From assembly GCA_002269645.1 (NCBI GenBank), contig NIVC01000916.1:186001-250000 (forward strand): 64,000 nt of DNA, given 5' to 3'. Made by a program: the position numbers and the translations under genes. This DNA is from Macrostomum lignano (Eukaryota). The notes under the pieces were generated by a model. The model did no database searches and was not told the origin of the DNA. It saw nothing but the letters and a program-made list of their open reading frames with translations. Shown piece after piece: positions 20,467 to 44,276 of the stretch. Numbering within the stretch: position 1 is the stretch's first letter; every line of letters begins with the position of its first letter.

Positions 20467-20467
20467 C

Positions 20468-25828: not shown

Positions 25829-25918
25829 ACCGGTGCAAGACATAAATACGGGCGTATTCTATAGGCCAAATAAACAGCAAAAAAACTTGGCTAAAGTTCT
25901 ATGGCAGAAATGCATTAA

Positions 25919-26861
25919 ATGAGCACACAATGCATTCCAAATTACTTCTATAGGCACCAGCATTTCTTAGCTCGCCCCAGGAAGTTCACCGACTGCATGG
26001 CTGAGCGGCTTCATCAACAGGCAAAGAGCCCAGCCAGGACGAGGACTTTATTGATGATGACGTCATCGTCTTCGAAACAGAGCGGCAACGCCGAGTCCAT
26101 CTCCGGTGGAAAGTGCAGCTCCCAGCTGAAGTGGCGGTCGGTTGCAGCGAAGTCAGCCAAGGGATCGGCTGGACTCGGGGGGTCTCAGAAGTCTCAGAAG
26201 GAGCAGCAAGCCGGACAAGGCTGGATCAGTCAGCAGCAGCAAGCCGGACAAGGCTGGATCAGTCAGCAGCAGCAAGCCGGACAAGGCTGGATCAGTCAGC
26301 AGCAGCAAGCCGGACAAGGCTGGATCAGTCAGGGGAGCAACAACCAGTGCGCTCTGGAGGGGTTCGATTCACCAGGTTCCGAGATGACGCTGCTGCAGAA
26401 TCAGGATGAAGCATGCCTTAACGAACCACCGCAGCAGTGGCAGCGGACTTCGGAATCCATACCTGACCTCTGCACCAACGGCAGAGATGGACAAGTAGGT
26501 CTTCCCGCAGAGATCCCAGCATCCACAATCAGTCTTGAAAGCTTGCTGTTTCAAAATGGTTTCGATGTGACTCGCGCGGAAGCTCAAACTCGTCTGGCCG
26601 ATTCGAAGTCTTCAGCTGATCAGTCAGGCTGGCAGTCACCACAGTCCCGCTGTCGCAGCTCCGAAGAGCAACCAGAGACTTCTCAAGATCATGAGACAGT
26701 GCGCGACCAGCTACTGCTGGCTGACTTCTCAGATGACGAACTGACCGACGCGGAGGCTGAGTCGGGCGAGCTCTTTCTGACTCCGAAGCCGCCAGTCCCG
26801 AAGCCGAGAACGAGGCGTACTTTAACGATGGAGCAACCGGCTGCTCAAGTGACTCAGTTGG
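25919..26861 (+). CDS. Orphan low-complexity S/Q/P-rich protein, exon 1 of 2 (start codon uncertain)
   Basis: Long open frame with four 33-bp coding repeats (QQQQAGQGWIS, 26203-26331); phase-1 donor G|GTAAAT at 26861/26862. Confidence 0.55.
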
Positions 26862-26926
26862 GTAAATCCCTCAGGGATCGATTGAATAATGAATTTATTG
26901 TTACATTACATTCGAGGGGGAGCGCC

Positions 26927-27090
26927 ATTTCGGCTGAGGGGCGCCATTTCAGCTGAGGGGCGCCATTTCAGTTGAAGGGGCGCCATTTCAGTTGAGGGGC
27001 GCCATTTCAGCTGAGGGGGCGCCATTTGATTTGAAGGGGCGCCATTTCATCTGAGGGGGCGCCATTTGATTTGAAGGGGCGCCATTTCAT
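26927..27090. repeat. Intronic ~21-bp tandem repeat (GGGGCGCCATTTCAGTTGA-like)
   Basis: About 8 copies. Confidence 0.9.
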
Positions 27091-27247
27091 TGGAGGTCAT
27101 GTTTAGCACCAGACCTATCGCGATTTCTTCAAGTCCCTTCTTGAGCCACGCGTACAGGTACACATGCAGATTTGCATTCATTAGCTCTCATTAACTGCAC
27201 CTCCTTGCTCTGAGACGCATATTGGTCTGTACGTGCAAATATTTCAG

Positions 27248-27765
27248 ATCCAGCGCTGCCGATTAACTTCAACGCAGCGGCGCCAGTGCCGACGCCAAGA
27301 CGGCGCCGATCTCAGCAGCAGCCGCAGCCAGTTGTTGTTTCGACGCCCGACTTTGAGCCGCTGCCTCCACCACCGACCTTGCCGGTGCCTCGAGAACGTC
27401 ACAGTCGTTGTAGACCTTCCGGGTCAGTTGACAACCAGCTTGATTGTGAGCAGCGATTTGATGATTCGCCTCTCGACGGGCCAGGCTGGACAAGCTCGAC
27501 AACCTCGCAGACCGACTCAGCCGAGGCCGGTGCCGTGGAAGACGACGCCACGGTGCGGCCGGAGTACGTCGACGAGGCTCTGGACCAGCTGCTGCTCACG
27601 CGGTCGCGGCTGACGCAGGGCCTGCCAGCAGTTGCTCAGCCAAAAACGCAAGCAAAAGGCTGCTCGGAACTGGCCAATGCCTTGACAACGGCCCGACGAC
27701 CGATGGAGCAACCGGCGGTGAAGCTGCCAGCGGGTGCCTCTGGCCGCAGGAGACCAGCGAACTGA
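27248..27765 (+). CDS. Orphan protein, exon 2 of 2
   Basis: Acceptor TTTCAG|AT is phase-compatible with exon 1 (G+AT = Asp) and continues in the 27286-27765 ORF frame to TGA. Confidence 0.55.
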
Positions 27766-28122: not shown

Positions 28123-28493
<371 letters not shown>

Positions 28494-28578
28494 GGTTGAA
28501 AGAATGTTTGCGAAAACACAGGGTGAACAATTTTATTATAAAACTACTCACAAAGTACCACCTAAGTAACACTGCAGA

Positions 28579-28584
28579 TTTATT
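28579..28584 (-). terminator. PolyA signal of heptad-repeat gene A
   Basis: AATAAA on the minus strand ~105 nt after the stop, at a position conserved with the paralog (42222-42227). Confidence 0.6.
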
Positions 28585-28688
28585 GGTCAAGTCAATAAAA
28601 GAGAAAACACAAAGGCTCAGATTTCATTTCCCATTGTGGGAGAAGGAGTTCAAGGATCAGAGCACCAAATAATTGAATAGCAAAGGGT

Positions 28689-29420
28689 TCAATAATCTCC
28701 CCCCTTCTTCCGGCCGTCACCGCCCTTGTTCCAGCGGTCTCCGCCCTTCTTCCAGCCGTCACCGCCCTTGTTCCAGCGGTCTCCGCCCTTGTTCCAGCGG
28801 TCTCCGCCCTTGTTCCAGCGGTCTCCGCCCTTGTTCCAGCGGTCTCCGCCCTTGTTCCAGCGGTCTCCGCCCTTGTTCCAGCGGTCTCCGCCCTTGTTCC
28901 AGCGGTCTCCGCCCTTGTTCCAACGGTCTCCGCCCTTGTTCCAGCGGTCTCCGCCCTTGTTCCAGCGGTCTCCGCCCTTGTTCCAGCGGTCTCCGCCCTT
29001 GTTCCAGCGGTCTCCGCCCTTGTTCCAGCGGTCTCCGCCCTTGTTCCAGCGGTCTCCGCCCTTGTTCCAGCGGTCTCCGCCCTTGTTCCAACGGTTTCCG
29101 CCCTTGTTCCAGCGGTCTCCGCCCTTGTTCCAGCGGTCTCCGCCCTTGTTCCAGCGGTCTCCGCCCTTGTTCCAGCGGTCTCCGCCCTTGTTCCAGCGGT
29201 CTCCGCCCTTGTTCCAGCGGTCTCCGCCCTTGTTCCAGCGGTCTCCGCCCTTGTTCCAGTGGTCTCCGCCCTTGTTCCAGTGGTCTCCGCCCTTGTTCCA
29301 GCGTTGTCCGTCCTTCGTGGAGCCGTTACTAGAGCCATCAGGCAGACTGGAAGCCGCGATGGCGCACAGAAGCGCCGCAGTGGCCGCAAGAAGAAGACGC
29401 CTGGACGAGTTTGTCGCCAT
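28689..29420 (-). CDS. Secreted heptad-repeat protein A (243 aa): signal peptide, short linker and 29 heptads (WNKGGDR) ending KKGGDY
   Basis: N-terminus MATNSSRRLLLAATAALLCAIAAS resembles a signal peptide. Repeat variants CGC>CGT and GGA>GGT are synonymous only in this frame. Paralog at 41724 shares the start, stop position, UTRs and promoter. Confidence 0.78.
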   Translation of the reverse strand: MATNSSRRLLLAATAALLCAIAASSLPDGSSNGSTKDGQRWNKGGDHWNKGGDHWNKGGDRWNKGGDRWNKGGDRWNKGGDRWNKGGDRWNKGGDRWNKGGDRWNKGGNRWNKGGDRWNKGGDRWNKGGDRWNKGGDRWNKGGDRWNKGGDRWNKGGDRWNKGGDRWNKGGDRWNKGGDRWNKGGDRWNKGGDRWNKGGDRWNKGGDRWNKGGDRWNKGGDGWKKGGDRWNKGGDGRKKGGDY

Positions 29421-29511
29421 TCTGTTTGCTTGAAGCAGATTGTTTTGGCAGTTAGCAAAACGCTATCTGAGAGTTCTGGGCGTTCTGAGAGTTCTGAGCC
29501 ATGAAGCATAC

Positions 29512-29562
29512 CGGTTATTTATGCGGAATTTGAAGAGAACACGATAGGTTGATTATGCAACC
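29512..29562 (-). promoter_or_regulatory. Conserved proximal promoter of gene A: GGTTGCATAATCAACCTA and AATTCCGCATAAATAACCG (TATA-like)
   Basis: Both blocks are near-identical to 41601-41648, upstream of the paralog. Confidence 0.65.
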
Positions 29563-29888
29563 CCGAGCACCTGCAACAGAGCCTTGGTGCCAGGTGAACA
29601 TTCAGATGTGCTGAGAAAATCTCAAATTAACTGGAATTTACCAGTTCGTCTTATTTACCAGTAGGTGTGGCTGCATTTTGCCAGGTGCAAACTGCTAATA
29701 GCCAACCTTATTAATTTGTTTCGGTCAGGCCCGCACTTGATTAGTACCGCGATATGCCAGTTTTAAGTAAAAACATCTGATCTGCTACGGAAACAAAAAG
29801 GGTTTGTGTAAAGCTCTTTTACTTTATTAATAATCACACACGATTTTTCCAGCAATTGAAGCTTACATTTTTTCAAGTTTAAAATTTA

Positions 29889-30365
29889 AGGGAGGTCCAG
29901 AGTGAGGGAGGTCAGAGTGAGGGAGGTCAGAGTGAGGGAGGTCAGAGTGAGGGAGGTCAGAGTGAGGGAGGTCAGAGTGAGGGAGGTCAGAGTGAGGGAG
30001 GTCAGAGTGAGGGAGGTCAGAGTGAGGGAGGTCAGAGTGAGGGAGGTCAGAGTGAGGGAGGTCAGAGTGAGGGAGGTCAGAGTGAGGGAGGTCAGAGTGA
30101 GGGAGGTCAGAGTGAGGGAGGTCAGAGTGAGGGAGGTCAGAGTGAGGGAGGTCAGAGTGAGGGAGGTCAGAGTGAGGGAGGTCAGAGTGAGGGAGGTCAG
30201 AGTGAGGGAGGTCAGAGTGAGGGAGGTCAGTGTGAGGGAGGTCAGAGTGAGGGAGGTCAGTGGGAGGGAGGTCAGAGTAAGGGAGGTCAGTGGGAGGGAG
30301 GTCAGAGTGAGGAAGGTCAGTGTGAGGGAGGTCAGAGTGAGGGAGGTCAGAGTGAGGGAGGTCAG
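29889..30365. repeat. 15-bp satellite (GAGGTCAGAGTGAGG), left part
   Basis: About 31 copies; interrupted by an LTR element insertion. Confidence 0.97.
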
Positions 30366-30623
30366 TGTTGTGCATCAGAGTTCAGCCTATAGCTTTAGTG
30401 CATTATTGTTTTTCTGTCTATGTGACTTAAGCTCGCTCAACTTTCGTTTTGTTGCTGTTTAGTCTATGGCAGTATACTCTTTCTTTCGCAGAGCTCCTCT
30501 CGGTTTCAGCCCTTCTCCCCCTCAAGACCCCGCCCAGAGCTATGCGTTCAAGATTCCTGATTATACCATCAAATATAAACGATAACCTTGCACCGCTCGT
30601 CATCTTAATCTCGACACACATCA
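30366..30623 (+). repeat. 5' LTR (258 bp; lacks a 197-bp segment and 4 bp relative to the 3' LTR)
   Basis: Alignment by eye with 32987-33445 shows one substitution plus the indels. Confidence 0.92.
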
Positions 30624-30956
30624 ATGGCGTCGCAACTCGGCAACCTGCCGCTCGAAAAGCCGGAGAGGGCGCAAACATGGCTGACTGCCTTCCAAGCGTT
30701 GGCCAGAGCGAAAGGATGGACTGACACTGCAGAAAAGAAATGCATCGCTGACAATTTCCTAGCTTGCTGCGGTCTGACTGCACTTGAAAAATTGCAAGAT
30801 CTTGTGTCTCCACGACTTGTAGCCGACCTGTCGTTTGCGGACATTGAGAAAACACTCCTGGACTACCTACGACCCAGAGAGAAACTGACCGTGGCGGAGA
30901 GGGCGCGGTTCTTCAACGTTCGTCAAGCGCCTAGCGAGTCCATTGGCGACTTTGTG
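30624..30956 (+). pseudogene. Truncated gag (N-terminal capsid region)
   Basis: MASQL...LRPREKLTVAERARFFNVRQAPSESIGDFV is typical Mag-like gag; breaks at the junction with the inverted segment. Confidence 0.8.
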
Positions 30957-31490
30957 AGCGTTGGAATGGATAGTCCGGGGCGGGCCATCGATCCCTGTCG
31001 TGGCCGACACGCGGTCGTAGGCGGCTGCAGACCGGGCAGCGTTGGACAAATCGTGACACATCCTGTTGCATCCCAGGCCACCAGCAAGACGCTGAAAGCA
31101 GGTTGTATGAGGCCTGAATTCCAGAGTGGGTGTCATGGATCGCGTCAAAGGCAGCCCGGCGCAACCGTGGGGGGATGTAAACCCTCCTCTGCATGTAAAG
31201 AAGTCCGTTTTCCAGCGTTAGCTTTTCGGAAACGGCTTTGAAGCTTGACTCTGCCTGCGAGCAACCTTGCCAATTTCCATTGCGTACTCTCATTAAAATC
31301 TTCTGGGTGAACGGGTCTGCGTCCATTTCTGCCAAAATTCTTCCGGCCTCGATCACCGGCGATTCAAATACCACGACGTTGATAGCATCAAACGTTTCCT
31401 TGTCGTCTGCTGAAGGGTGATCAAAGCGGAGCCGAGATAAAGCGTCAGCGTGTGGGATGTCGCGGCCTCGCACGTACTCGATGTTGAAGG
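30957..31490 (-). pseudogene. Inverted pol fragment (RNaseH end plus integrase HHCC domain) from a related subfamily
   Basis: IEYVRGRDIPHADALSR...HDTH...CPVC...YPFQR on the minus strand, with no stops. Confidence 0.88.
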
Positions 31491-32807
31491 TACGCGCGAG
31501 GGAGCAGCATTCCCCATGCTGACGCAATTTCTAGACTGCGCTTTGACGACTGCACCTCGGACGACAAGGAGACGTTTGAAGCTATTAATGCTGTGGCTTT
31601 TGAGGCACCGGTGATTGACGCAGATAGGGTTGCAGCCGAACTGAGTACTGACGCGTTCGCTCAACGCATCTTGGAGCGTGTACGCTCCGGCAATTGGAGG
31701 AGTTGCAGTCAGGCAGAGGCATCCTTCAAGAAGGTTGCGGAGACACTAACGCTGGAGAACGGGCTTCTCTATATGCAGAGACGCGTGTTTATACCACCGC
31801 GGCTGCGCAAGGCAGCGTTTGAGGCAGTTCATGACACCCATTCAGGTGCACAAGCTTCGTACAACCTGCTCTCAGCGTCTTGCTGGTGGCCTGGCATGCA
31901 GCAGGATGTAACCCAGTTTGTCCAGCGCTGCCCAGGCTGTTGCCACTTGCGACCTCGCTTGGGAAATGACAGAGACCACTGGCCGGCAGCTTCGTACCCG
32001 TTTCAACGTATCCATATGGACTGGGCCTATGTGAAGGACGCCGGTAACATTCTAGTCATCATTGACACATTTTCTGGTTGGATAGAGGCATTCCCCTGTC
32101 GGAATAGAACTGGCGAATCAGTTATGCAGTGTTTGCGCGCAGTGTTCGCACGCTTTGGAGTGGCCGAGCTGGTAGTGTCCGATAATGCACCAGAGTTCAT
32201 CGGTGATCCCCTCTACTCTTGGCTACGGGCCAATGGTGTCCATAAACTTGAATCGCCAGCTTATTATCCACAGGCAAACGGAGCGGCCGAACGCGCTGTA
32301 CAGACCGTCAAAGCTGCACTGCGCGCGTGGTCAGAGAGAATTACGCACATGGAATTCAGCCATTTTCTGCAGAAAGTGCTGCTCCACCATCGGAACTCAG
32401 CATCGTCGCGGGAGCAATGCCCGGCCGAGATACTGTTCGGCAAAAAGCTCAGAGTACCGGTGGTGACGCACTTTGAGCAAGGTGACGGCGTCATGTATCG
32501 GCCTACCGCCTCCGCAAGCACCAACTCAGCCACATTTCTAATGACGTCAGGGCGCAACACCGCATGGATTCTGGCTAAAAATGGATTGCACCTGGCCAGT
32601 ACAAACCAACTGGCGCCCGCAGCCGATCCATTCGCCACCGACGAGGAGGATAGCTATGAAACCGATGCTCCAGTTCCGAACGTCGACGAGGACTCAAGAG
32701 ACGAAGACCCTGCTACGGGACAGGAGGGTCCAACCCAGGAGCATGGGGCTGCGTTGCCCCGCCGTAGCACCCGTGCATGCCGCGCGCCTGATCGCTTCTC
32801 ACCATGA
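31491..32807 (+). CDS. pol 3' fragment: RNaseH end plus intact integrase (HHCC, DDE)
   Basis: IPHADAISR, HDTH/CPGC, HMD, VSDNA and AAER motifs intact; PR and RT absent. Confidence 0.85.
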   Translation, partial: YARGSSIPHADAISRLRFDDCTSDDKETFEAINAVAFEAPVIDADRVAAELSTDAFAQRILERVRSGNWRSCSQAEASFKKVAETLTLENGLLYMQRRVFIPPRLRKAAFEAVHDTHSGAQASYNLLSASCWWPGMQQDVTQFVQRCPGCCHLRPRLGNDRDHWPAASYPFQRIHMDWAYVKDAGNILVIIDTFSGWIEAFPCRNRTGESVMQCLRAVFARFGVAELVVSDNAPEFIGDPLYSWLRANGVHKLESPAYYPQANGAAERAVQTVKAALRAWSERITHMEFSHFLQKVLLHHRNSASSREQCPAEILFGKKLRVPVVTHFEQGDGVMYRPTASASTNSATFLMTSGRNTAWILAKNGLHLASTNQLAPAADPFATDEEDSYETDAPVPNVDEDSRDEDPATGQEGPTQEHGAALPRRSTRACRAPDRFSP

Positions 32808-32986
32808 TTGACTCACTGACAATTCTTCAGATAACAAAAACTGCTCTACTTAATCATATACCTAACATAACGCTCTGGCATAGTCGTTTCCCACATATGA
32901 TAGTTTGAATAGTTCTTTCTATGATTGTTGCTCACGCGCGTATGCGTGAATATCGGCCCCACGCCCTTCGTTCCGTAAGGGGGACA

Positions 32987-33445
32987 TGTTGTGCATCAGA
33001 GTTCAGCCTATAGCTTTAGTGCATTATTGTTTTTCTGTCTATGTGACTTAAGCTCGCTCAACCTTCGTTTTGTTGCTGTTTAGTTAGTCTATGGCAGTTG
33101 TAGTGTACGCCCCCTCTATGCCTTCACGCTTTTCTCTGACTAGCTTTCGCCCTCTTGTCCAACGTGCACTAGCACTGGCCCCGTCAACCATTGCGTAACA
33201 CTGTAGCCGCACGTCGGCAGTGAGTTGATATAATAGCTCAAATATACGGTTCACGAGACCAGGTTTTTTGCCACACACAAGAGCACTACAGCAGTATACT
33301 CTTTCTTTCGCAGAGCTCCTCTCGGTTTCAGCCCTTCTCCCCCTCAAGACCCCGCCCAGAGCTATGCGTTCAAGATTCCTGATTATACCATCAAATATAA
33401 ACGATAACCTTGCACCGCTCGTCATCTTAATCTCGACACACATCA
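32987..33445 (+). repeat. 3' LTR (459 bp)
   Basis: Preceded by the PPT and followed by the TSD. Confidence 0.92.
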
Positions 33446-33850
33446 GTCAGAGTGAGGGAGGTCAGAGTGAAGGAGGTCAGAGCAAGGGAGGTCAGAGTGA
33501 GGGAGGTCAGAGTGAGGGAGGTCAGAGTGAGGGAGGTCAGAGTGAGGGAGGTCAGAGTGAAGGAGGCCAGAGCAAGGGAGGTCAGAGTGAGGAAGGTCAG
33601 AGTGAGGGATCAGAGTGAAGGAGGTCAGTGCAAGGGAGGTCAGAGTGAGGGAGGTCAGAGTGAAGGAGGTCAGAGCAAGGGAGGTCAGAGTGAGGGAGGT
33701 CAGAGTGAGGGAGGTCAGAGTGAGGGAGGTCAGAGTGAGGGAGGTCAGAGTGAGGGAGGTCAGAGTGAGGAAGGTCAGAGTGAGGGATCAGAGTGAAAGA
33801 GGTCAGTGCAAGGGAGGTCAGAGTGAGGGAGGTCAGTGTGAGGGAGGTCA
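33446..33850. repeat. 15-bp satellite, right part
   Basis: Continuation of the 29889-30365 array. Confidence 0.95.
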
Positions 33851-34211
33851 TTGCAAATGTTTTGCGGGGTCAGCAAGACCAGCTCAGGTCTGCAACAGTA
33901 ACTTGAGTTTGGCAGAACTTGCTAAACCACTCTCCTATTAAGCGCCTAACTGGGTCCCTGCGCAGTTCTGTTGAAGCACTACCCAAATTCGAAGATCAGC
34001 CAATATGAAGCCTCTTGGCGTTCGGGCAACCCCAGCCTCGAGCTCAGCTGCAGAACAGATAAGAATTGTTTACAAAAATCGCATACAAAACTAGTATTAG
34101 TGAGAGTGGCACAACCTCAAGCTGGTGAGACTGAGACCTGAAGTCGCTCAGAAGCTTCGTCGGCAAAGTTTTTATTCGGAAAGTTCCCATTGTACTTTAA
34201 CAAAACTAAGG

Positions 34212-34391
34212 ATGATGCGCCTGTCGCAGTGCCGCAAGCGAACCCTCGTTGCCAGCGCCATCGTGGTTGCCACCATCTGCTCTGACGGTGCGGCGGTCTC
34301 GGGCTGGCAGCTGCTGCCGCTGCTTGCCCTGCTGCACCTCCTGGCTGCCGTTGTTGGCAGCTGGATGGCTCTGCGGACCTGCCTCATCAGG
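34212..34391 (+). CDS. PISD: Phosphatidylserine decarboxylase proenzyme, exon 1 of 4 (basic N-terminus plus hydrophobic anchor); gene 34212-37772, ~368 aa
   Basis: ATG, phase-0 donor AGG|GTGAGT, frame-compatible with exon 2. Confidence 0.7.
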
Positions 34392-35375
34392 GTGAGTCAA
34401 CAGCCCGGTGTCAGAATCGATATATCAGGAAATCTTTGTTGAAATACTTGTTGAAATTCTTAACAATCAAGGTGACAATGGAGCGTGGCTCATTATTAAG
34501 TTGCATTGTTATCTACATGTAATGCATTGATTACCGATTTAGCAAAACAGACCAGCGGTCTGGTGCCCCCCTTCGGGGCGGCCAATAAGCGAATCTCATT
34601 CGCCTTTGAGATCTCAGCAATTTCCCCCAAGCTCATCTCACGGATGCCATTGAATAAATGATGAGTCAGTGAACTGGAGTCAGTAATACGAGCTAGGAGA
34701 GTCAGCGAGGGCGGAGTCGGGGAGAGGGGTCAGTGAGAGGGGGTCAGTGAGGGGGGTCAGCGAGAGGGGGTCAGAGTGGGGGGGGCAGTACGAGCGAAAC
34801 GAGCGGTCTGCCGCCTGTCTCAGCGCCGAAATCCGAGGGCAAGTTCGGCTCATAAAGTTCGCTTCGAGGCGGTGCTTCGCTCACCCCTCTCACTGCTAGC
34901 GAAAAATGTTGAAATTTTTACCTGCCTTAAAAAGATTGTGTTCTCAGCCTTGCTAAGTCGCTATTGGAGTTCGGATCAACCTCAGCTGACTTGTCGAATT
35001 CTGGTTTGCTCTGGGGGGCCAGAGCTGCAGGCTTTGTCTGAGCCAATCCAGTTTGAACAACCGGCCAACTGGTTCACCAACTGGTTGCGTGACCGGTTCC
35101 GGAAACTCTGTAATTTTCCACCGACCTTTGAAATGCTGAAAAATGTTGTAAACTTGCCCGATAAATTGCGGGCTGCTATCGCGGAGAGATAAGACTGGGT
35201 GGGGCAGCCAGGACTGCATGGGGGGGGGCTGCAAACTCAAAGAGATATCAGCAGCTTTTTAGTGCAAACAATTTGTATGAGAAATTTCCACTGATCTTTA
35301 AGTAGTTCACTCATTTGCGTCAACCTTTCCTTGCACTTTATGGATCAACGGATCAGTCAGCTGCCTCTCATCTAC

Positions 35376-35613
35376 CCAGTTGGGTAGCCACTCCCTCACT
35401 CAGTTGGGTAGCCACTCCCTCACTCAGTTGGGTAGCCACTCCCTCACTCAGTTGGGTAGCCACTCCCTCACTCAGTTGGGTAGCCACTCCCTCACTCAGT
35501 TGGGTAGCCACTCCCTCACTCAGTTGGGTAGCCACTCCCTCACTCAGTTGGGTAGCCACTCCCTCACTCAGTTGGGTAGCCACTCCCTCACCCAGTTGGG
35601 TAGCCACTCCCTC
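35376..35613. repeat. 24-bp intronic minisatellite (CAGTTGGGTAGCCACTCCCTCACT), 10 copies
   Basis: Tandem array ending ~33 nt before the PISD exon 2 acceptor. Confidence 0.96.
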
Positions 35614-35646
35614 AGCCAGCTGGTCCGCCCCTCTGCCCACCCTCAG

Positions 35647-35973
35647 GCCTACTGCCGCCTGCCGCTGCCTCTGAACTTCATCTCCCGTGCCTGGGGCCGC
35701 TGTCACAGCCGCCCGCTGCCCCGGCTGGCCCGCGCCCCAGTCTACCGGCTGTACAGCCGTCTCTGCAGCTGCGACCTGACCGAGGCCGACTGTCAGGGCC
35801 TGGCGGATTTCAACAGCTTGGCCGAGTTTTTCTCTCGCAGCCTCCGACCGGGCCTTCGACCGGTGTGCCCGACGAGTGACCTGGTGTCCCCCGCCGACGG
35901 CCGGGTGCTCAGCCTGGGCCGGGTTTATGCCGGTCACCTGGAGCAGGTGAAGGGCATCACCTACAGCTTACAG
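35647..35973 (+). CDS. PISD: PISD exon 2
   Basis: ISRAWG...FNSLAEFFSRSLRPGLRP...VSPADG...EQVKGITYSL; acceptor CCCTCAG| and donor CAG|GTGAG. Confidence 0.93.
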
Positions 35974-36549
35974 GTGAGCTGAATTAGGCCTGTTATATCT
36001 GTTAATGCCGTTCTGTTCTGTAGTTTAAACACCTGGTTCTCAATGTACACTTTAAGAGTTCTGGTGCTCGTTAATCCTTCTCTACCCGCCTACAAGTCCC
36101 TTATCTTTGAAGGTCGGGAGGGCTGTTAACCGGCACTGTTTCACCCCTTTGGCTCGCCAAACCGGGACTTTATCAAACTAATTTCTACTAATTAGTAGTC
36201 GAACGTGGCTCTAATGTTTGTTTGAGCAATACTGTGCAACAGGTGGTTCGTCCTCGATTTTCCGGATGCTAAAACTTGGATCACGGATTGGTCTCTGATG
36301 CCAGAAATTCAGTTAACAATGACAACTTCAAGAGGCCTATTGGGGTAGTGTGGGACCTGTACGTAGGATCAACCCCCAAGGCACCGACAGTATGTATGTC
36401 TGACAATTAGAAAGTCGGGTTCGCTGTGCACCCTGTCTGAGTGCGTGGCGTAGGAATGGACATGACTAGCTATGAAATACCATTTCTAGCTCCAATCGCC
36501 AGTGCAAATGCCACAAAACCACCTGCCAACCACCTGCCAACCACCGCAG

Positions 36550-36927
36550 GGTTTCCTTGGTCCCCAGCCGATTGGCGAATTCGACAAAAACCAGACTCTG
36601 CCTAGCAACCATAAAGCGTCGAGTAGCGACGGTCCCTACTTGGAAGGCCTGCGCCGCCTGCCCGGTACGCAGCTGTTCCACTGCACGATCTACCTAGCAC
36701 CGGGTGACTATCACCGGTTTCACTCACCGGCCGACTGGCTGGTGCTGGCCAGGCGCCACTTCCCCGGCCGCCTGCTGTCCGTGGCGCCGCCCGTGGCCGC
36801 GTGCGTGGCCGGCCTGTTCTGCGTCAACGAGCGGGCGGTTTTTGTCGGCGAGTGGCGCCACGGCTTCTTCAGCATGACGGCTGTCGGAGCCACTGGCGTC
36901 GGGTCCATCAGCGTCGCCTGCGATCCG
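36550..36927 (+). CDS. PISD: PISD exon 3
   Basis: GFLG...IYLAPGDYHRFHSP...NER...AVGATGVGSI; acceptor CGCAG| and donor |GTAAG. Confidence 0.95.
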
Positions 36928-37550
36928 GTAAGAGTCGCGGGGAGGGATGTCTTCAACGTGACATACTAAATACCATCAGGTAGGTTAGCTGTTTCAGGGA
37001 ATCTGAGTACCACTTCCTTGACAACTCACTGCACTTCAGCACCTTCTCAGCACCTTAGAACAGTATAAAATCCATTTACACAGTCAGGCTTCAGTAGCCT
37101 AGTGACTTTCGATACCACAGTAAAAAATGAATTTGCATTTGCTAATCAATTGTTAGATATTAAGTCTTGTTTGAGGACAAAATTTTGTAGAAAAAGTCTG
37201 TCAAAAATTATCATTTAACGCGTACAAACAGGTCCAAAGTTTCAGTAAATTTCGAAGTTGTGAACTCAAATAATTTTACTTTGAATGTTCTGATTAAGGA
37301 GGTAATATCTAGTGGTCGTTACCCGTACAGCAATTATCTATACATCCACTGATAAAGACGTCATACGTCGGCTAGACGTCGGACTGCTGTACGGGTTACT
37401 TAGTGCACACTTGGTGCTTTGGGTGGTTAAATTAACCCTGCAAATCGTCTCGACAAGCATCCCGGATGGGACGATCTAGGAGACCGCGATCCGCTACTCA
37501 GTCAGGTCTTAGTCCCATGTAGCTGAGAACTCTCTTCTCTGCTCCCACAG

Positions 37551-37772
37551 GAGCTGGCAACCAACCGCGGCGCCAAACAGGCCGGGCCGGCCGGCTTTGC
37601 TGACCGACGCCTCCAGCCGAATCCGCGCTTCGGCAAAGGCGAGCCGTTCGGCCAGTTCAACCTGGGCAGCACCGTCGTGCTGGTGTTTGAGGCGCCCGAA
37701 CAGTTTCAATTCGCTGCCACGGCTGGACAGAAGATCCGGGTTGGACAGAGCTTTGGCTGGGTGCACAGTTAG
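37551..37772 (+). CDS. PISD: PISD exon 4
   Basis: [16 protein letters not shown] contains the LGST autocleavage motif; ends at TAG. Confidence 0.95.
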
Positions 37773-37956
37773 CTGATATTCGGCTGCCTGCTCTGATTGG
37801 CTGGAGTGCCTGTTGCTGCTATGATGATGGTGCTGTTTGCAGCATCCCGATGTGAGGCAGGATTAGCAAAATGCAGTGCCGGGCTGCTGTGTCGAACTCG
37901 CACTTCAGCTTAGGATACAGGGAGAGGCAGTTTGCTATTTAGAGTGGCAAGTGACC

Positions 37957-37994
37957 CAGGGACTACTCAAAAACTAGTTATTGAGTAGTCCCTG
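37957..37994. other. Perfect 14-bp stem / 10-nt loop inverted repeat, 185 nt after the PISD stop
   Basis: CAGGGACTACTCAA - AAACTAGTTA - TTGAGTAGTCCCTG. Confidence 0.8.
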
Positions 37995-39171
37995 ATGTGA
38001 CCTTGACCCAGTGTGGAGATCTGGTGAGCAGGGCTTACCCGAGAATGTGCCCGAAGAAGAGGCACTTCTGAGTAGTCTGTTCTTTGTGATACCTGTGGAA
38101 CCAATTGTTGTGCTGGCGTATACCGGATGCCAGCGTGTGTGGAACCAATGCGGTTGCATTGCGATTGTACTGGATGCACGAATTGCAGTGTACTAGCTGA
38201 ATGCTGTGAAGTACATGTACGATTGCGGTGCAGAATTTGCACGAGAAATAGGCTGCAGGGAAGGTACACCACGCGTGATAATTGAACCGCGCAGTGCGCT
38301 TTCTCTGCCAAATGAACTCTAACGAGCTCCTATACAGTATACAGATAGCTATTAGCGCCTTTGATCGATTATATAGCCCAATAAACTACTAAAAGTAGTT
38401 GACGGACCAAAAAATTAATCAATAATATGAGCCATAATTCTCTGCGCATTAATTTCTGAATTGCGATAAGATTTGAATGCACTAATTATTAACTCACTCT
38501 ATTTGTACACTGCAGACATCAGTTTTGTTATAATTTAAAGCTTTTTTGTATGCTTTCGATGCCTTTGTTATAGAAGTTGAATATTCAGAGAAACAATGAA
38601 TGGATTCGTTGAGACAATCGTGATTGTATCGGTTGTCATTCATATGCACATTAGAACACTAATTCGCAACCCAGTCATCTTCACGTGCTGATTCTTGGTT
38701 TGCGAAATGCATAACATTTGCATGGATACATATTCATATTTGCACAATTCATCTTGTAAAATACACGAAAGAGTTTCAACTGTAAATTAGTTACAAATGC
38801 ATATTCCATATTTCTGAATTATTCGTGAATCCTCCGGCCTTTAACTTTTGGAAACGTCAGGGAACACCTGAAGTCAGAATGTTTGCAATACAATCAAGAC
38901 AAAGGCATTGACAAGAAATTCGCCGGATTGACAAAGCGTACTTATAATTTTATGCAAAGCTTGGAGCGAAAAAGAGTCTGTACATGGATATAGAACTTCC
39001 TGCACATCGATTAACTACATGTAAGTAGGTTCCAATATAGGCGAACAAATCGCTCAAATCAGTTTTTCGCACTGCATACGACAAAAATGAGCAGTGGCAG
39101 TAAATACTTATAAGGGCGTTGCCAAGGAATCTAGACTCATGGGTATTGCTGACATGATATGGATTAATAAC

Positions 39172-41558
39172 ACTGACCTCCCTCACTCTGACCTCCCTCC
39201 CACTGACCTCCCTCACTCTGACCTCCCTCCCACTGACCTCCCTCACTCTGACCTCCCTCCCATTGACCTCCCTCACTCTGACCTCCCTCCCACTGACCTC
39301 CCTCACTCTGACCTCCCTCACACTGACCTTCCTCACTCTGACCTCCCTCCCACTGACCTCCCTCCCACTGACCTCCTTCACTCTGACCTCCTTCACTCTG
39401 ACCTCCCTCACTCTGATCTCCCTCCCACTGACCTCCATCACACTGACCTCCCTCACACTGACCTCCATCACACTGACCTCCCTCACTCTGACCTCCCTCC
39501 CACTGACCTCCCTCACTCTGACCTCCCTCCCACTGACCTCCCTCACTCTGACCTCCCTCCCACTGACCTCCATCACACTGACCTCCATCACACTGACCTC
39601 CCTCACTCTGACCTCCCTCCCACTGACCTCCCTCACTCTGACCTCCCTCACTCTGACCTCCCTCCCACTGACCTCCATCACACTGACCTCCCTCACTCTG
39701 ACCTCCCTCCCACTGACCTCCATCACACTGACCTCCCTCACTCTGACCTCCCTCCCACTGACCTCCATCACACTGACCTCCATCACACTGACCTCCCTCA
39801 CTCTGACCTCCCCCCCACTGACCTCCCTCACTCTGACCTCCCTCCCACTGACCTCCATCACACTGACCTCCCTCACTCTGACCTCCCTCCCACTGACCTC
39901 CCTCACTCTGACCTCCCTCCCACTGACCTCCCTCACTCTGACCTCCCTCCCACTGACCTCCATCACACTGACCTCCATCACACTGACCTCCCTCACTCTG
40001 ACCTCCCTCCCACTGACCTCCCTCACTCTGACCTCCCTCACTCTGACCTCCCTCACTCTGACCTCCCTCACTCTGACCTCCCTCCCACTGACCTCCATCA
40101 CACTGACCTCCCTCACATTGACCTCCATCACACTGACCTCCCTCACTCTGACCTCCCTCCCACTGACCTCCATCACACTGACCTCCATCACACTGACCTC
40201 CCTCACTCTGACCTCCCTCCCACTGACCTCCCTCACTCTGACCTCCCTCACTCTGACCTCCCTCCCACTGACCTCCATCACACTGACCTCCCTCACTCTG
40301 ACCTCCCTCACTCTGACCTCCCTCACTCTGACCTCCCTCACTCTGACCTCCTTCACTCTGACCTCCCTCACACTGACCTCCATCACACTGACCTCCCTCA
40401 CTCTGACCTCCCTCCCACTGACCTCCCTCACTCTGACCTCCCTCCCACTGACCTCCCTCACTCTGACCTCCCTCCCACTGACCTCCATCACACTGACCTC
40501 CATCACACTGACCTCCCTCACTCTGACCTCCCTCCCACTGACCTCCCTCACTCTGACCTCCCTCACTCTGACCTCCCTCCCACTGACCTCCATCACACTG
40601 ACCTCCCTCACTCTGACCTCCCTCCCACTGACCTCCATCACACTGACCTCCCTCACTCTGACCTCCCTCCCACTGACCTCCATCACACTGACCTCCATCA
40701 CACTGACCTCCCTCACTCTGACCTCCCTCCCACTGACCTCCCTCACTCTGACCTCCCTCACTCTGACCTCCCTCACTCTGACCTCCCTCCCACTGACCTC
40801 CATCACACTGACCTCCCTCACTCTGACCTCCCTCCCACTGACCTCCCTCACTCTGACCTCCCTCCCACTGACCTCCCTCACTCTGACCTCCCTCCCACTG
40901 ACCTCCATCACACTGACCTCCATCACACTGACCTCCCTCACTCTGACCTCCCTCCCACTGACCTCCCTCACTCTGACCTCCCTCACTCTGACCTCCCTCA
41001 CTCTGACCTCCCTCACTCTGACCTCCCTCCCACTGACCTCCATCACACTGACCTCCCTCACATTGACCTCCATCACACTGACCTCCCTCACTCTGACCTC
41101 CCTCCCACTGACCTCCATCACACTGACCTCCATCACACTGACCTCCCTCACTCTGACCTCCCTCCCACTGACCTCCCTCACTCTGACCTCCCTCACTCTG
41201 ACCTCCCTCCCACTGACCTCCATCACACTGACCTCCCTCACTCTGACCTCCCTCACTCTGACCTCCCTCACTCTGACCTCCCTCACTCTGACCTCCTTCA
41301 CTCTGACCTCCCTCACTCTGACCTCCCTCCCACTGACCTCCCTCACTCTGACCTCCCTCACTCTGACCTCCCTCCCACTGACCTCCCTCACTCTGACCTC
41401 CCTCACTCTGACCTCCCTCCCACTGACCTCCATCACACTGACCTCCCTCAGTCTGACCTCCCTCACTCTGACCTCCCTCACTCTGACCTCCCTCCCACTG
41501 ACCTCCATCACACTGACCTCCCTCACATTGACCTCCCTCACACTGACCTCCCTCACAT
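39172..41558. repeat. 15-bp satellite, inverted relative to 29889-33850 (TGACCTCCCTCACTC and variants), ~160 copies with a 945-bp higher-order duplication
   Basis: Rare variants recur 945 nt apart (40116/41061 and 40351/41296). Confidence 0.97.
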
Positions 41559-41600
41559 TTGAAAACTTTTATATTTCAATCGCCGGAGAATTTCCGCGGC

Positions 41601-41648
41601 GGTTGCGTAATCAACCTACTGTATCTTTAAATTCCGCATAAATAACCG
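41601..41648 (+). promoter_or_regulatory. Conserved proximal promoter of heptad gene B
   Basis: GGTTGCGTAATCAACCTA and AATTCCGCATAAATAACCG match 29512-29562 (minus strand). Confidence 0.65.
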
Positions 41649-41723
41649 CGCTATACCTCATTACCCAAAACTCTCAAATAGCGTTTTGCTAGCTGACCAA
41701 CCAATCTGCTTCAAGCAAACAGA

Positions 41724-42108
41724 ATGGCGACAAACTCGTCCAAGCGTCTTCTTCTTGCGGCCACTGCGGGGCTTCTGTGCGCCATCGCGGCTTCCAGTCT
41801 GCCTGGTGGCTCCAGTAACGGACGGACAACGCTGGAACAAGGGCGGAGACCGCTGGAACAATGGCGGACAACACAGGAACAATGGCGGAAAACACATGAA
41901 CAATGGCGGACAACACAGGAACAATGGCGGACAACACAGGAACAATGGCGGACAACACAGGAACAATGGCGGACAACACAGGAACAATGGCGGACAACAC
42001 AGGAACAATGGCGGACAACACAGGAACAATGGCGGACAACACAGGAACAATGGTCGAAACAGCAAGAAGAAGGGCGGAGACCGCAGGAAGAAGGGTGGAA
42101 ATTATTGA
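41724..42108 (+). pseudogene. Secreted heptad-repeat gene B: paralog of A with 13 heptads (mostly RNNGGQH) and an 11-nt deletion at ~41820 that shifts the frame after the signal peptide
   Basis: MATNSSKRLLLAATAGLLCAIAAS. Restoring 11 nt gives 131 aa ending KKGGNY, at the same stop position as A. As written, the ATG frame runs to 42149. Confidence 0.7.
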
Positions 42109-42221
42109 ACTCATTGCTATCCAGCTATTCGGTGTGCTCTGCTCCTTGAACTGTGCTTTCTCTCACAATAGGAAATGAAATTTGAGCCTCTTTGTTAATT
42201 TCATCATTGTATTGACTAGGC

Positions 42222-42227
42222 AATAAA
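42222..42227 (+). terminator. PolyA signal of gene B
   Basis: AATAAA within a 3' UTR homologous to that of gene A. Confidence 0.6.
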
Positions 42228-42865: not shown

Positions 42866-43615
42866 TTGAACACTTTTGCTTCTTGCTGCCCAAGTAAAAG
42901 AATGTACACTGCTCCAGCCACTCCAGATTTTTCGGCCATGAGTTTCGGATACCTGCGGCAGATCGGCGGCCGGACATTCTGGGTGTTCCAGCAGAGACAG
43001 ACGGGTCAAATCGCCTTCAACAGGAGCTGGGATGACTACGTCCGCGGCTTCGGGAATGCCACAGAGTTCTGGGCTGGTGAGCATCCCATGCAGTGCTGGG
43101 TGTAAAACATTGTCTGTGTGTGTGCTCAACTTGGCGAGTATGTAAGTTTTTGACCATGCCAATTGCAGGACTCGATAACATCCACGATGTGAGTGCGAAT
43201 AGCCCTAGAAACCTGCGAATCGAGGCCCAGACCTTCGAAGGAGAGTCCTACGCGTTCGAGTATCTCAGCTTCACGGTCGGGAACTGCAGCAAGAACTACA
43301 GGATGAACTGCGGCAGCTTACTCAACGCCAACAAGAGCTTTGGGAGCAACAGCTCCACCTTCACCTCCGACTTCTTGGCCGGGGCTCGAGAGGCTATCAG
43401 TTCTCCACCTTCAACAGGGACAACGACGCTTATTCCTCCTCAAGCTGCAGCACCGGGTATGGCAGGGGCGGCTGCTGGTGGGGAAGCTGCATGAAATCCA
43501 ACCTGAACGGCGTGCACTCAGCCACGCAGGCGTCCGGTGCCGCCTACAAGGCCTCGACTATCATTGGAGACTACGAGGCCCTCCGTATACGATGCAGATG
43601 ATGCTGCGGGTGTGA
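42866..43615 (+). pseudogene. Fibrinogen-related domain (FReD/ficolin-like) gene with intron 43077-43168 and two apparent 1-nt deletions (~43392 and ~43545); 5' end not identified
   Basis: WVFQQR..G..FNRSWDDYVRGFG..EFWAG|LDNIH, then FSTFNRDND..C..GGCWW..C..SNLNG, then ...MMLRV* are spread over three frames. Confidence 0.8.
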
Positions 43616-44075
43616 ATTTTTGTCACAGTTCAATTATCAGTGTTAATGTCTGAAGATGCTTTTTAATAATCCAATTCTTTATATCGGTTGCGAAAAACAA
43701 AATTATCAGTGACTGACTATTGTCCTCATCTCGCGTTGTTACATTTTATTAAACGGCAAAAAATCAAACTGTGAATCGCAACTCTCACAATTGTGTCTTC
43801 GTGTTTCTGGCAGAAACTTTTATGAAATTTTATTTAAACACGATTTCTTTTATTTACGCTTGGATCTTTGTGTTAGGATGTTTTTGCTACACCATGCTCT
43901 GACAGCTAGAATTCTCACATTAAACTGCATTCCGATTCTGTTTTGTAATAACTGAAATTTTATGAGCATATTTATTGGAGTGAAATCAGCATCACTTATT
44001 CTATTCTGTTGGTGCTTTCTATTTAAATATATCCGCTTCTGTCCCACCAAAAGTAACTAAATAAAAGTTCGTTTC

Positions 44076-44276
<201 letters not shown>

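What the first reader, a model, noticed from the sequence alone, without database searches (positions are those of the whole stretch)
28579..42227. Inverted pair of intronless secreted heptad-repeat protein genes: an apparent orphan family
Seen: gene A (28689-29420, minus) is a signal peptide plus 29 x WNKGGDR-type heptads. Gene B (41724-42108, plus) has nearly the same signal peptide, 13 heptads that have drifted to RNNGGQH, and the same KKGG(D/N)Y end. 5' UTR, 3' UTR and AATAAA are alignable. Repeat variants in A are synonymous in this frame, supporting real coding. I recognise no known family. Inference: a rapidly evolving gland secretion (adhesive, mucus, cocoon/eggshell, seminal or antimicrobial). 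The W/R/K/G periodicity would suit cation-pi coacervation or membrane activity, while the N/G/Q/H version looks prion-like or metal-binding.
Basis: partly seen in the sequence, partly recalled or inferred. Interest (0 to 1): 0.75.

Follow-up and report, generated by a model that had tools for sequence, protein, structure and literature searches.

The report
Orphan secreted repeat gene, broken twin
In the flatworm Macrostomum lignano, an unannotated small gene appears to encode a secreted, strongly positively charged protein made of 26-40 copies of the 7-residue unit WNKGGDR. Its inverted duplicate has lost that reading frame, so this is one plausible lineage-specific gene plus a decaying or frame-shifted copy, with no expression data available here.

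Summary
Gene A (28689-29420, minus) is exactly as described. It is an intact 243-aa ORF with a signal-peptide-like N-terminus and 29 heptads encoded by a 21-bp minisatellite, with a TATA box, Kozak ATG and AATAAA plus GU-rich element.

Gene B is not as described. An 11-bp deletion after the signal peptide puts the ATG (41724) in a different frame from the RNNGGQH heptads. The real ORF is 41724-42149 and reads EQWRTTQ-type repeats.

The window is Macrostomum lignano contig NIVC01000916.1. Two further copies of the locus exist in the same assembly:
- A is intact in all three copies, with 26, 29 and 40 heptads.
- B carries the deletion in all three, and one copy has a further 1-nt deletion.

No homologue, Pfam family, solved structure or paper was found, and neither gene is annotated.

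The "synonymous variants" claim fails (6 synonymous vs 9 replacement codons). The near-identity of the A and B signal-peptide blocks is best explained by gene conversion, not protein-level selection.

The window is packed with minisatellites that give long chance ORFs, so coding of A is likely (about 0.6) but unproven.

The closest functional analogue is the Gly/Arg/Lys-rich cohesive repeats of flatworm adhesives. Interest is modest.

The parts
29516..29522 (-). Gene A TATA box (ATAAATA), about 100 nt upstream of the ATG. It sits in a block (GGTTGCATAATCAACCTA...TTCCGCATAAATAACC) conserved with gene B.
   Evidence: Read. Conserved in A and B and in all three locus copies.
29349..29420 (-). Gene A start codon (Kozak AACAGAATGGCG) and signal-peptide-like N-terminus. 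MATNSSRR is the basic n-region, LLLAATAALLCAIAA the h-region, and small residues A-x-A / A-S-S lie at -3/-1.
   Evidence: Among ATG ORFs of at least 80 aa in the window, only A and B have a hydrophobic N-terminus that is not itself repeat sequence.
29301..29348 (-). Gene A linker (SLPDGSSNGSTKDGQR) between the signal peptide and the array. It contains the 11 bp that gene B lacks.
28692..29300 (-). Gene A coding minisatellite: 29 x 21 bp, WNKGGDR consensus. GC at codon position 3 is 6/7, like host exons.
28689..29420 (-). Gene A complete ORF, 243 aa. The mature protein is about 25 kDa, pI 10.6, net charge about +27, with G 29%, K 15%, D 14%, N 13%, W 13%, R 12%.
   Evidence: Intact in L001 (222 aa) and L003 (320 aa).
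28540..28688 (-). Gene A 3'UTR with AATAAA at 28584-28579, followed by a GU-rich element (GTGTT...TTTGTGAG).
29889..30365 (.). 15-bp minisatellite upstream of gene A (first part). It belongs to the inverted duplication.
30366..33445 (+). Rearranged LTR-retroelement fragment inserted into the A-side minisatellite. It is specific to this copy of the locus.
   Evidence: About 258-bp direct repeats at both ends, of which 155 bp are 100% identical. Integrase domains. Absent from L003.
33446..33850 (.). 15-bp minisatellite, second part of the A-side array, in the same orientation as 29889-30365.
34104..37772 (+). Phosphatidylserine decarboxylase (PISD) gene, 4 exons, lying between the two inverted copies. 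This gene identified the organism.
39170..41557 (.). 15-bp (30-bp higher-order) minisatellite upstream of gene B, inverted relative to the A-side array.
   Evidence: inverted arms 91-94% complementary.
41638..41644 (+). Gene B TATA box (ATAAATA).
41724..42149 (+). Gene B ORF as actually read from its ATG: 141 aa. It consists of the signal peptide, then LEQGRRP, EQWRTTQ-type heptads, and a tail read from the former 3'UTR.
41819..41824 (+). Site of the 11-bp deletion relative to gene A (2-nt GG microhomology). It shifts the frame and is present in all three locus copies.
41833..42108 (+). Gene B array of 13 x 21 bp plus the old-frame stop codon. The first and last two units are still A-type. The interior units are AGGAACAATGGCGGACAACAC, which is RNNGGQH in the old frame and EQWRTTQ in the ATG frame.
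42222..42227 (+). Gene B AATAAA, followed by the conserved GU-rich element.

Best explanation
The window is Macrostomum lignano (assembly Mlig_3_7, contig NIVC01000916.1).

Gene A is most likely a real, lineage-restricted, intronless gene with a TATA promoter. Its product would enter the secretory pathway and be released as an intrinsically disordered polycation of about 25 kDa (net charge about +27). That protein is built from 26-40 copies of WNKGGDR.

The repeat region is a coding minisatellite. It grows and shrinks by whole 21-bp units through unequal exchange or slippage and is kept homogeneous by the same process.

Gene B is the inverted duplicate of A. The duplication also carried the upstream 15-bp minisatellite, and the two copies now flank the PISD gene. 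An 11-bp deletion that predates the triplication of the locus disconnected B's signal peptide from the original frame. B's unit then diverged at about the neutral rate (5 of 21 bases, mostly towards A/T). B lost the GC3 codon signature, and one copy gained a further frameshift. B is therefore most likely a decaying pseudogene.

Ongoing gene conversion between the inverted copies keeps the block from -22 to about +160 (signal peptide and first units) nearly identical.

Inferred function of A: an extracellular polycation that binds polyanions such as glycocalyx, sulfated glycans or microbial surfaces. It would work like the Gly/Arg/Lys-rich cohesive repeats of flatworm adhesive proteins or like Gly-rich cationic defence peptides.

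Shown: anatomy, frames, copy-number variation, organism, and absence of homologues.
Inferred: transcription, secretion and function.
For: Organism and paralogous loci:
- The PISD exon matches M. lignano PAA85269.1 at 96%.
- Window 24104-47000 is 100% identical to L002.
- L001 and L003 carry the same A - PISD - B arrangement.
- The assembly is known to hold 180 Mb of duplicated blocks (PMC5730564).

For A being a gene:
- Intact ORFs of 243, 222 and 320 aa in three copies that are 1-5% diverged, with no indel or stop in about 2 kb of array.
- The signal peptide and linker differ only by 2 synonymous changes among the A copies.
- TATA, Kozak ATG, and AATAAA plus GU-rich element are conserved.
- The unit has GC3 of 0.86 in the signal-peptide frame against 0.60 and 0.55 in the others. 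Host exons have 0.78-0.87.
- Frame 2 is closed by stops. The only upstream ATG for frame 1 lies between the TATA box and the expected start site, and B lacks it.
- Only A and B have non-repeat signal-peptide-like N-termini in the window.

For B being broken:
- The 11-bp deletion is in all three copies.
- There is a 1-nt deletion in the last unit of the L001 copy.
- GC3 is 0.57, 0.60 and 0.40 in the three frames.
- B-specific signal-peptide changes are nearly all replacements.
- The unit divergence of 5/21 is not different from the flanks (p=0.55).

For gene conversion:
- There are 0-1 silent differences between A and B in the 96-nt signal-peptide block, where 4.7 are expected (P(0)=0.009).
- The TCG/TCA variant is shared by A and B within each locus.
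- The first two units of B in L001 equal the WNKGGDH units of A in the window.

For the functional analogue: GRK-repeat cohesive proteins of flatworms are positively charged and are displaced by polyanions (PMC9229212).
Against: - No transcript, peptide or orthologue evidence could be obtained.
- Neither gene is among the called genes of the RNA-seq-guided GenBank annotation of the three loci. No protein with this N-terminus exists in a 5.8-billion-protein collection.
- The window holds at least 25 minisatellites, several of 21 bp, that give chance ORFs of up to 868 aa. An open frame across the array therefore proves little.
- The synonymous excess in the A units is not significant (5/14 against 19% expected).
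- GC3 of at least 6/7 has a chance probability of 0.13, and the signal-peptide and linker codons show no GC3 bias (0.62).
- Conservation of the signal-peptide block is explained by gene conversion.
- AlphaFold gave no trustworthy fold: one of five models reached pLDDT 76 and the other four about 38, with pTM 0.31.
- The function is argued from composition only.
Confidence: 0.6

Rival explanations
1. Neither A nor B makes a protein. They are two copies of a duplicated segment that contains a 21-bp minisatellite. The ATG, hydrophobic stretch, TATA-like and AATAAA strings are fortuitous or belong to a non-coding transcript.
For: - Minisatellites cover a large part of the window and produce many long ORFs mechanically.
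- Simple and tandem repeats make up 15% of this genome.
- There is no annotation, no homologue and no literature.
- The synonymous/replacement counts are not significant.
- Silent and replacement sites of the signal-peptide block are equally conserved, which indicates gene conversion.
Against: - It would be an unlikely coincidence to find all of these together: a textbook signal peptide in frame with the array, a Kozak ATG, a TATA box 100 nt upstream, a stop directly after the array, and AATAAA plus a GU-rich element 105 nt later. All are conserved in A across three copies.
- GC3 of the unit matches host exons only in that frame.
- No other minisatellite ORF in the window has such an N-terminus.
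- The A arrays have no indels in about 2 kb, whereas B has two frame-breaking indels in about 0.8 kb.
Confidence: 0.25
2. B is not dead. After the 11-bp deletion it became a frame-shifted paralogue whose signal peptide now exports an EQWRTTQ-repeat protein. This would be a different protein read from the same minisatellite.
For: - The ATG frame is open through the array in all three copies (141, 96 and 148 aa).
- The substitution fixed at unit position 9 (AAG to AAT) creates TGG (Trp) in the new frame. The substitution at position 1 removes the Trp of the old frame.
- Unit variants at positions 17 and 20 (1-based within the 21-bp unit; listed as 16 and 19 in the script output) give ACA/ACG/ACC, silent Thr codons in the ATG frame but Q/R and H/R/P replacements in the old frame. 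The counts are 3 silent of 7 against 0 of 7.
- Promoter, TATA box and AATAAA are retained.
Against: - A 21-bp unit without stops is open by construction.
- 3 of 7 silent variants is not significant against 21% expected.
- GC3 in the ATG frame is only 0.40, against 0.8 in host genes.
- The C-terminus is not conserved: the L001 copy ends at EKG* after a 1-nt deletion.
- B-lineage changes in the signal peptide are replacements.
- The unit diverged at the neutral rate.
Confidence: 0.2
3. A is a multi-copy precursor that is cut into many identical short peptides, either antimicrobial or signalling, like cnidarian or insect polyprotein precursors.
For: - It has a signal peptide followed by 28 near-identical short units.
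- The unit is cationic and contains Trp.
Against: - In the signal-peptide frame there is no dibasic or furin site between units, and no Gly-Lys/Arg amidation signal. KK occurs only in the last units.
- The frame that would give PLEQ-Gly-Arg-Arg is closed by stops in A.
Confidence: 0.07

Closest known systems
GRK (Gly/Arg/Lys-rich) repeat regions of flatworm adhesive cohesive proteins: the flanks of Mlig-ap1 in M. lignano and the stand-alone ap3 of Minona ileanae and Theama mediterranea (PMC9229212)
   Same: - Same animal group, and for Mlig-ap1 the same species.
- A signal peptide followed by low-complexity, highly repetitive, strongly positively charged sequence rich in G, K and R.
- The proposed mode of action, binding anionic partners with release by polyanions, is what a +27 WNKGGDR polymer could also do.
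   Different: - ap3 and the GRK flanks are thousands of residues long, and about 88% of ap3 is G/R/K/H/S. Protein A is 222-320 aa, and 40% of it is W, N and D.
- No sequence similarity was found.
- Expression in adhesive glands is untested.
Coding-minisatellite secreted glue proteins, e.g. Drosophila Sgs3/Sgs4 (own knowledge)
   Same: - Small genes with few or no introns that encode a signal peptide plus short tandem units (7 aa in Sgs4).
- Copy number differs between alleles.
- The genes evolve fast and lack homologues outside a narrow clade.
   Different: - Sgs repeats are Thr/Pro/Cys-rich and O-glycosylated, whereas the A unit is W/N/K/G/G/D/R.
- They are unrelated in sequence and phylum.
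Schistosome eggshell precursor genes (p14-type; own knowledge)
   Same: - A flatworm small-gene family that is intronless and TATA-driven.
- Signal peptide plus Gly-rich repeats containing Lys, Asp and an aromatic residue.
   Different: - Eggshell precursors rely on many Tyr residues (DOPA) for quinone tanning. Protein A has one Tyr and uses Trp.
- No similarity was detected.
- Macrostomum forms its eggshell from oocyte granules, and expression of A there is unknown.
Glycine-rich cationic antimicrobial peptides with short repeats, e.g. armadillidin GGGF(H/N)R (own knowledge; AMP reviews listed)
   Same: Each short unit has the aromatic + Gly-Gly + basic-residue pattern, the peptides are cationic, and they are secreted.
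   Different: - Those mature peptides are about 50 aa with 5 repeats. Protein A has 26-40 units and one Asp per unit.
- Activity is untested.
De novo repeat genes such as codfish antifreeze glycoprotein (own knowledge)
   Same: The architecture is a signal peptide joined to an amplified short coding unit, and there are no homologues elsewhere.
   Different: There is no evidence here on how A arose, and no outgroup sequence was available.

Membership tests
Flatworm GRK-repeat cohesive proteins (Mlig-ap1 flanks / ap3) | N-terminal signal peptide | tested here: met
   A basic n-region, a 15-residue hydrophobic core and small residues before the predicted cut site. This is a rule-based judgement; SignalP is not available.
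Flatworm GRK-repeat cohesive proteins (Mlig-ap1 flanks / ap3) | Composition dominated by G, R and K (plus H and S), about 88% in Tmed-ap3 (PMC9229212) | tested here: not met
   G+K+R is 55% of mature A, and W+N+D is 40%.
Flatworm GRK-repeat cohesive proteins (Mlig-ap1 flanks / ap3) | Detectable sequence similarity to ap1/ap3 | tested here: inconclusive
   No hit with E of 0.01 or better among 5.8 billion proteins. Whether ap1/ap3 sequences are in that collection is unknown.
Flatworm GRK-repeat cohesive proteins (Mlig-ap1 flanks / ap3) | Expression in adhesive gland cells of the tail plate | not testable with these tools
   No expression data are accessible.
Coiled-coil heptad-repeat proteins | Hydrophobic residues at positions a and d of each heptad, with helix-compatible residues elsewhere | tested here: not met
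   There is only one hydrophobic residue (W) per unit, and Gly-Gly occurs in every unit. The AlphaFold helical hairpin appeared in only 1 of 5 models, with pTM 0.31.
Multi-copy neuropeptide / prohormone precursors | Dibasic or furin cleavage sites flanking each copy, often with a Gly amidation donor | tested here: not met
   The unit WNKGGDR has no KR/RR/KK and no Gly-basic pair. The frame with PLEQGRR is closed by stops in A.
Coding-minisatellite secreted glue/mucin-type proteins (Sgs-like) | Signal peptide plus short tandem coding units whose number varies between copies or alleles | tested here: met
   26, 29 and 40 units in three locus copies, always whole units.
Coding-minisatellite secreted glue/mucin-type proteins (Sgs-like) | Ser/Thr/Pro-rich units carrying O-glycans | tested here: not met
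   There is no S, T or P in the consensus unit.
Schistosome-type eggshell precursor proteins | High Gly content with abundant Tyr for quinone tanning | tested here: not met
   Gly is 29%, but there is a single Tyr, at the C-terminus.
Any Pfam family / solved structure | Significant profile or sequence match | tested here: not met
   Pfam gave no family for A (243-aa and 320-aa copies) or for B in the old frame. The B ATG-frame hit to DUF874 is below the cut-off. PDB gave only designed consensus-TPR repeats at 25 bits or less, which is a repeat-versus-repeat artefact.

The most novel reading that the evidence does not exclude
Gene B is a live example of 'frame-switching' in a coding minisatellite. 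After an 11-bp deletion, the same promoter and signal peptide would export a new protein read from another frame of the same repeat (EQWRTTQ). The unit then acquired substitutions that moved the Trp codon from the old frame into the new one. On this reading, one ancestral gene gave rise to two unrelated secreted repeat proteins sitting as an inverted pair.
Probability: 0.15. Interest if true: 0.6.

Novelty: new member of a known kind. Interest (0 to 1): 0.3.

Why it matters
If gene A is expressed, it adds an unannotated, species- or genus-restricted secreted polycation to a flatworm used as a model for bioadhesion, regeneration and seminal-fluid biology. Its chemistry is unusual: one Trp, two basic residues and one acidic residue in every seven.

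The pair also gives a compact case study of how coding minisatellites change length, get homogenised by gene conversion between inverted copies, and die or possibly switch frame.

There are two practical lessons. Transcript-guided annotation misses genes whose body is a perfect tandem array. Conversely, in a genome where 15% is tandem repeats, an ORF across a 21-bp array is weak evidence on its own.

Tried and rejected
- Exact-protein look-up of A found nothing.
- A homologue search with A found nothing.
- A full-text search for the heptad strings found nothing.
- Literature searches on Macrostomum gland, seminal-fluid, rhabdite and eggshell proteins turned up no matching protein.
- The supplements of the prostate in-situ screen (PMC5977470) contain no matching sequence.
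- Rfam and tRNA scans of the window were empty.
- The GGA exon search did not identify the organism; the best hit was 41% to a snail. The PISD exon did.
- I asked whether B's signal-peptide exon could be the first exon of the fibrinogen-domain sequence 0.7 kb downstream. I rejected this because B keeps its own AATAAA, A has no such neighbour, and A/B homology ends about 80 nt after the poly(A) signal.
- I asked whether the higher A/B identity of the signal-peptide block (3.4% vs 14-20% substitutions, p=6e-5) shows purifying selection. I rejected this because silent sites are equally conserved.
- The AlphaFold single-sequence model of A was not trusted, so no fold search was run.
- One repeat finder and one megablast call mostly returned redundant minisatellite matches.

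Full report
**1. What is in the sequence**

On the minus strand, an ATG at 29420 opens a 243-codon ORF that ends at 28689. It encodes three parts:
- MATNSSRRLLLAATAALLCAIAASS, with a basic n-region, a 15-residue hydrophobic core and small residues at the likely cleavage site.
- A 16-residue linker, LPDGSSNGSTKDGQR.
- 29 units of exactly 21 bp. 21 of them are the identical TGGAACAAGGGCGGAGACCGC (WNKGGDR) and the last is RKKGGDY. TRF gives 29.5 copies at 96%.

The surrounding signals are canonical:
- An ATAAATA box lies about 100 nt upstream (29522-29516).
- The ATG has a Kozak context (AACAGAATGGCG).
- The stop codon follows the array directly.
- AATAAA (28584-28579) lies 105 nt further on and is followed by a GU-rich element.

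The mature protein would be about 25 kDa with pI 10.6 and net charge about +27. Its composition is G 29%, K 15%, D 14%, N 13%, W 13%, R 12%.

**2. Gene B is not one ORF**

Aligning the two loci shows that B lacks 11 bp present in A between AGTAACGG and ACGGACAACGC. The consequences are:
- The ATG at 41724 reads the array in another frame. The ORF is MATNSSKRLLLAATAGLLCAIAASSLPGGSSNGRTT-LEQGRRP-(EQWRTTQ)n..., it stops at 42149, and it is 141 aa long.

The B array has 13 units. The first and the last two are still A-type. The interior units are AGGAACAATGGCGGACAACAC, which differs from the A unit at 5 of 21 positions.

**3. The 'synonymous variants' argument fails**

- In the window copy, variant codons in the heptad frame are 6 synonymous and 9 replacement, against 4 and 10 in the other two frames.
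- Pooling 95 units from three locus copies gives 14 distinct variants, of which 5 are synonymous in the heptad frame. Random mutation of this unit would give 19%. That is an excess of less than two-fold and is not significant.

**4. Context**

A and B are the only copies in the window and lie head-to-head 12.3 kb apart. Each has the same 15-bp minisatellite upstream, in mutually inverted orientation:
- On the A side it lies at 29889-30365 and 33446-33850.
- On the B side it lies at 39170-41557.

The unit that was duplicated therefore ran from the minisatellite to about 80 nt beyond the poly(A) signal. Beyond that point the flanks are unrelated.

The A-side minisatellite is split by a 3.1-kb rearranged LTR-element fragment (30366-33445). 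It has 258-bp terminal direct repeats, of which 155 bp are 100% identical, and it carries integrase domains.

Between the two genes lies a four-exon phosphatidylserine decarboxylase (PISD) gene.

The window as a whole is saturated with minisatellites. More than 25 arrays have 12-36-bp units, and three others have 21-bp units. Many give chance ORFs of up to 868 aa. An ORF through a 21-bp array is therefore weak evidence here. On the other hand, A and B are the only ORFs in the window whose hydrophobic N-terminus is not itself repeat sequence.

**5. Organism and extra copies**

- A search with the PISD exon found a 96% match, PAA85269.1 of Macrostomum lignano.
- Fetching the three M. lignano PISD loci showed that window 24104-47000 is 100% identical to contig NIVC01000916.1 (L002). 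Two further contigs (L001, L003) carry the same A - PISD - B arrangement at 95-99% identity.
- This redundancy is expected. [quoted passage not shown]
- The LTR insertion is absent from L003.
- Neither A nor B is a called gene in any of the three loci.

**6. Comparative evidence**

Gene A:
- It is intact in all three copies, at 243, 222 and 320 aa, which is 29, 26 and 40 whole units.
- There is no indel or stop in about 2 kb of array.
- The 40 signal-peptide and linker codons differ only by two synonymous changes.

Gene B:
- It carries the 11-bp deletion in all three copies, so the deletion predates the multiplication of the locus.
- Its ATG-frame ORFs are 141, 96 and 148 aa.
- The L001 copy has an additional 1-nt deletion in the last unit that changes the end of both frames.
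- Its lineage-specific changes in the signal peptide are almost all replacements: R7K, A16G/V, D28G, N32D.

Codon usage:
- Host exons in the window have 78-87% G/C at codon position 3.
- The A unit has 86% in the signal-peptide frame, against 60% and 55% in the others.
- The B unit has 57%, 60% and 40%.
- The chance of 6/7 or better in one given frame is 0.13, so this is supportive only.

Unit divergence:
- The B unit's 5/21 divergence does not differ from the 17% substitution level of the A/B flanks (p=0.55).
- Three of the five changes go from G/C to A/T, as expected for unconstrained sequence.

**7. Gene conversion**

The block from 22 nt before the ATG through the first repeat units shows 3.4% substitutions between A and B. 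The 5' flank shows 13.9% and the 3' flank 20.3% (p=6e-5).

This is not protein-level selection, because silent sites are just as conserved. There are 0-1 silent differences where 4.7 are expected (P(0)=0.009).

Two further observations point the same way:
- A and B of the same locus share the TCG/TCA variant.
- The first two units of B in L001 are the WNKGGDH variant that begins the A array in the window.

Recurrent gene conversion between the inverted copies is the simplest explanation. The 11-bp deletion has survived it, or arose after the last large tract.

**8. Searches for relatives**

- There is no exact protein on record.
- There is no homologue among 5.8 billion proteins.
- Pfam gives no family for A or for either frame of B.
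- PDB gives only designed consensus-TPR repeats at 25 bits or less, which is a periodicity artefact.
- There is no paper with the heptad strings and nothing in the Macrostomum gland literature or in one supplement set.
- AlphaFold without an alignment gave a helical hairpin in one of five models (pLDDT 76, the others about 38, pTM 0.31). I do not trust this, because every unit contains Gly-Gly.

**9. Interpretation**

A is probably (about 0.6) a genuine, lineage-restricted, intronless gene for a secreted, disordered polycation whose body is a coding minisatellite. B is its inverted duplicate that lost the frame and is most likely decaying.

The alternative for B is attractive but unsupported. 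It holds that B now exports an EQWRTTQ-repeat protein. In its favour:
- The G-to-T change that makes AAT in the old frame creates TGG (Trp) in the new one.
- The variable unit positions 17 and 20 (1-based within the 21-bp unit; 16 and 19 in the script output) are silent Thr third positions in the new frame, but replacements in the old frame.

Against it:
- The counts are 3 of 7 against 0 of 7, which is not significant.
- GC3 in that frame is 0.40.
- The C-terminus is not conserved.

I give this alternative about 0.15-0.2.

For function I commit to extracellular polyanion binding. The closest analogue in the same animals is the Gly/Arg/Lys-rich repeat of the cohesive adhesive proteins (Mlig-ap1 flanks, ap3). 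These are positively charged and are thought to be released by a secreted polyanion (PMC9229212).

A is not a member of that group:
- It is far smaller.
- 40% of it is W, N and D.
- No sequence similarity was found.

Processing into short peptides is unlikely because the unit has no cleavage or amidation signals.

**10. Verdict**

The finding is a new, unannotated member of a familiar kind, namely taxon-restricted secreted tandem-repeat genes. No expression evidence was obtainable here. Interest is modest, at 0.3.

Noticed in passing
window 30366-33445: A rearranged LTR-retroelement fragment is inserted exactly into the 15-bp minisatellite. It has about 258-bp terminal direct repeats, 155 bp of them 100% identical, and the right-hand repeat carries a 190-bp insert. 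It also has a gag-like ORF and two integrase fragments in inverted orientation (30980-31987, 70% self-complementary). It is absent from the paralogous locus L003, so the insertion is recent.
   Followed up: partly
window 5406-8750 (+): An uninterrupted 1114-aa Ty3/gypsy-type pol ORF with zinc knuckle, protease, RT, RNase H and integrase domains. It is possibly an active element. GC3 is 0.47, unlike host genes.
   Followed up: no
window 42866-43600 (+): Fibrinogen C-terminal domain sequence lies 0.7 kb downstream of gene B. It is spread over at least three reading frames, with degenerate motifs, and it is not a called gene in GenBank. It is probably a pseudogene or fragment. There is no counterpart downstream of gene A.
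   Followed up: partly
whole window, e.g. 1-1451, 13392-14119, 20364-21505, 23623-25830, 39170-41557, 52995-55620, 57590-59066: Minisatellite density is extreme. More than 25 arrays have 12-36-bp units, with up to 112 copies, and they produce chance ORFs of up to 868 aa on both strands. Three other arrays also have 21-bp units: 14515-14654, 22055-22694 and 23623-25830 (105 copies).
   Followed up: partly
window 35377-35614: A 24-bp x 9.9 minisatellite (99% identical units) lies in the first intron of the PISD gene. It is in frame with the ORF that contains exon 2 but is not part of the annotated protein. Copy number differs between the three loci.
   Followed up: partly
window 44000-52000 vs L003 14300-20600: In the window copy the GGA gene exon (56398-57585) lies about 19 kb downstream of PISD. 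In L003 the GGA gene starts 6.3 kb downstream. The window copy therefore holds large extra sequence: an AT-rich block (28-30% GC), a 178-bp satellite at 46977-47862, a (TCA)66 run at 44074-44275, and more minisatellites.
   Followed up: no
window 25946-27765 (+): An annotated two-exon gene of 444 aa with no Pfam domain converges on the 3' end of gene A. An (AAGT)93 microsatellite (28123-28494) lies between them. The protein is low-complexity and Q/S/P-rich and contains a 33-bp x 4 coding repeat (26202-26332).
   Followed up: no
window 56398-57585: A search with this GGA exon returned only a 41% snail hit, although an M. lignano GGA protein (740 aa, L003) is in the collection. The low-complexity hinge probably filled the candidate list, which is a caution for word-index searches with repeat-rich queries.
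   Followed up: no
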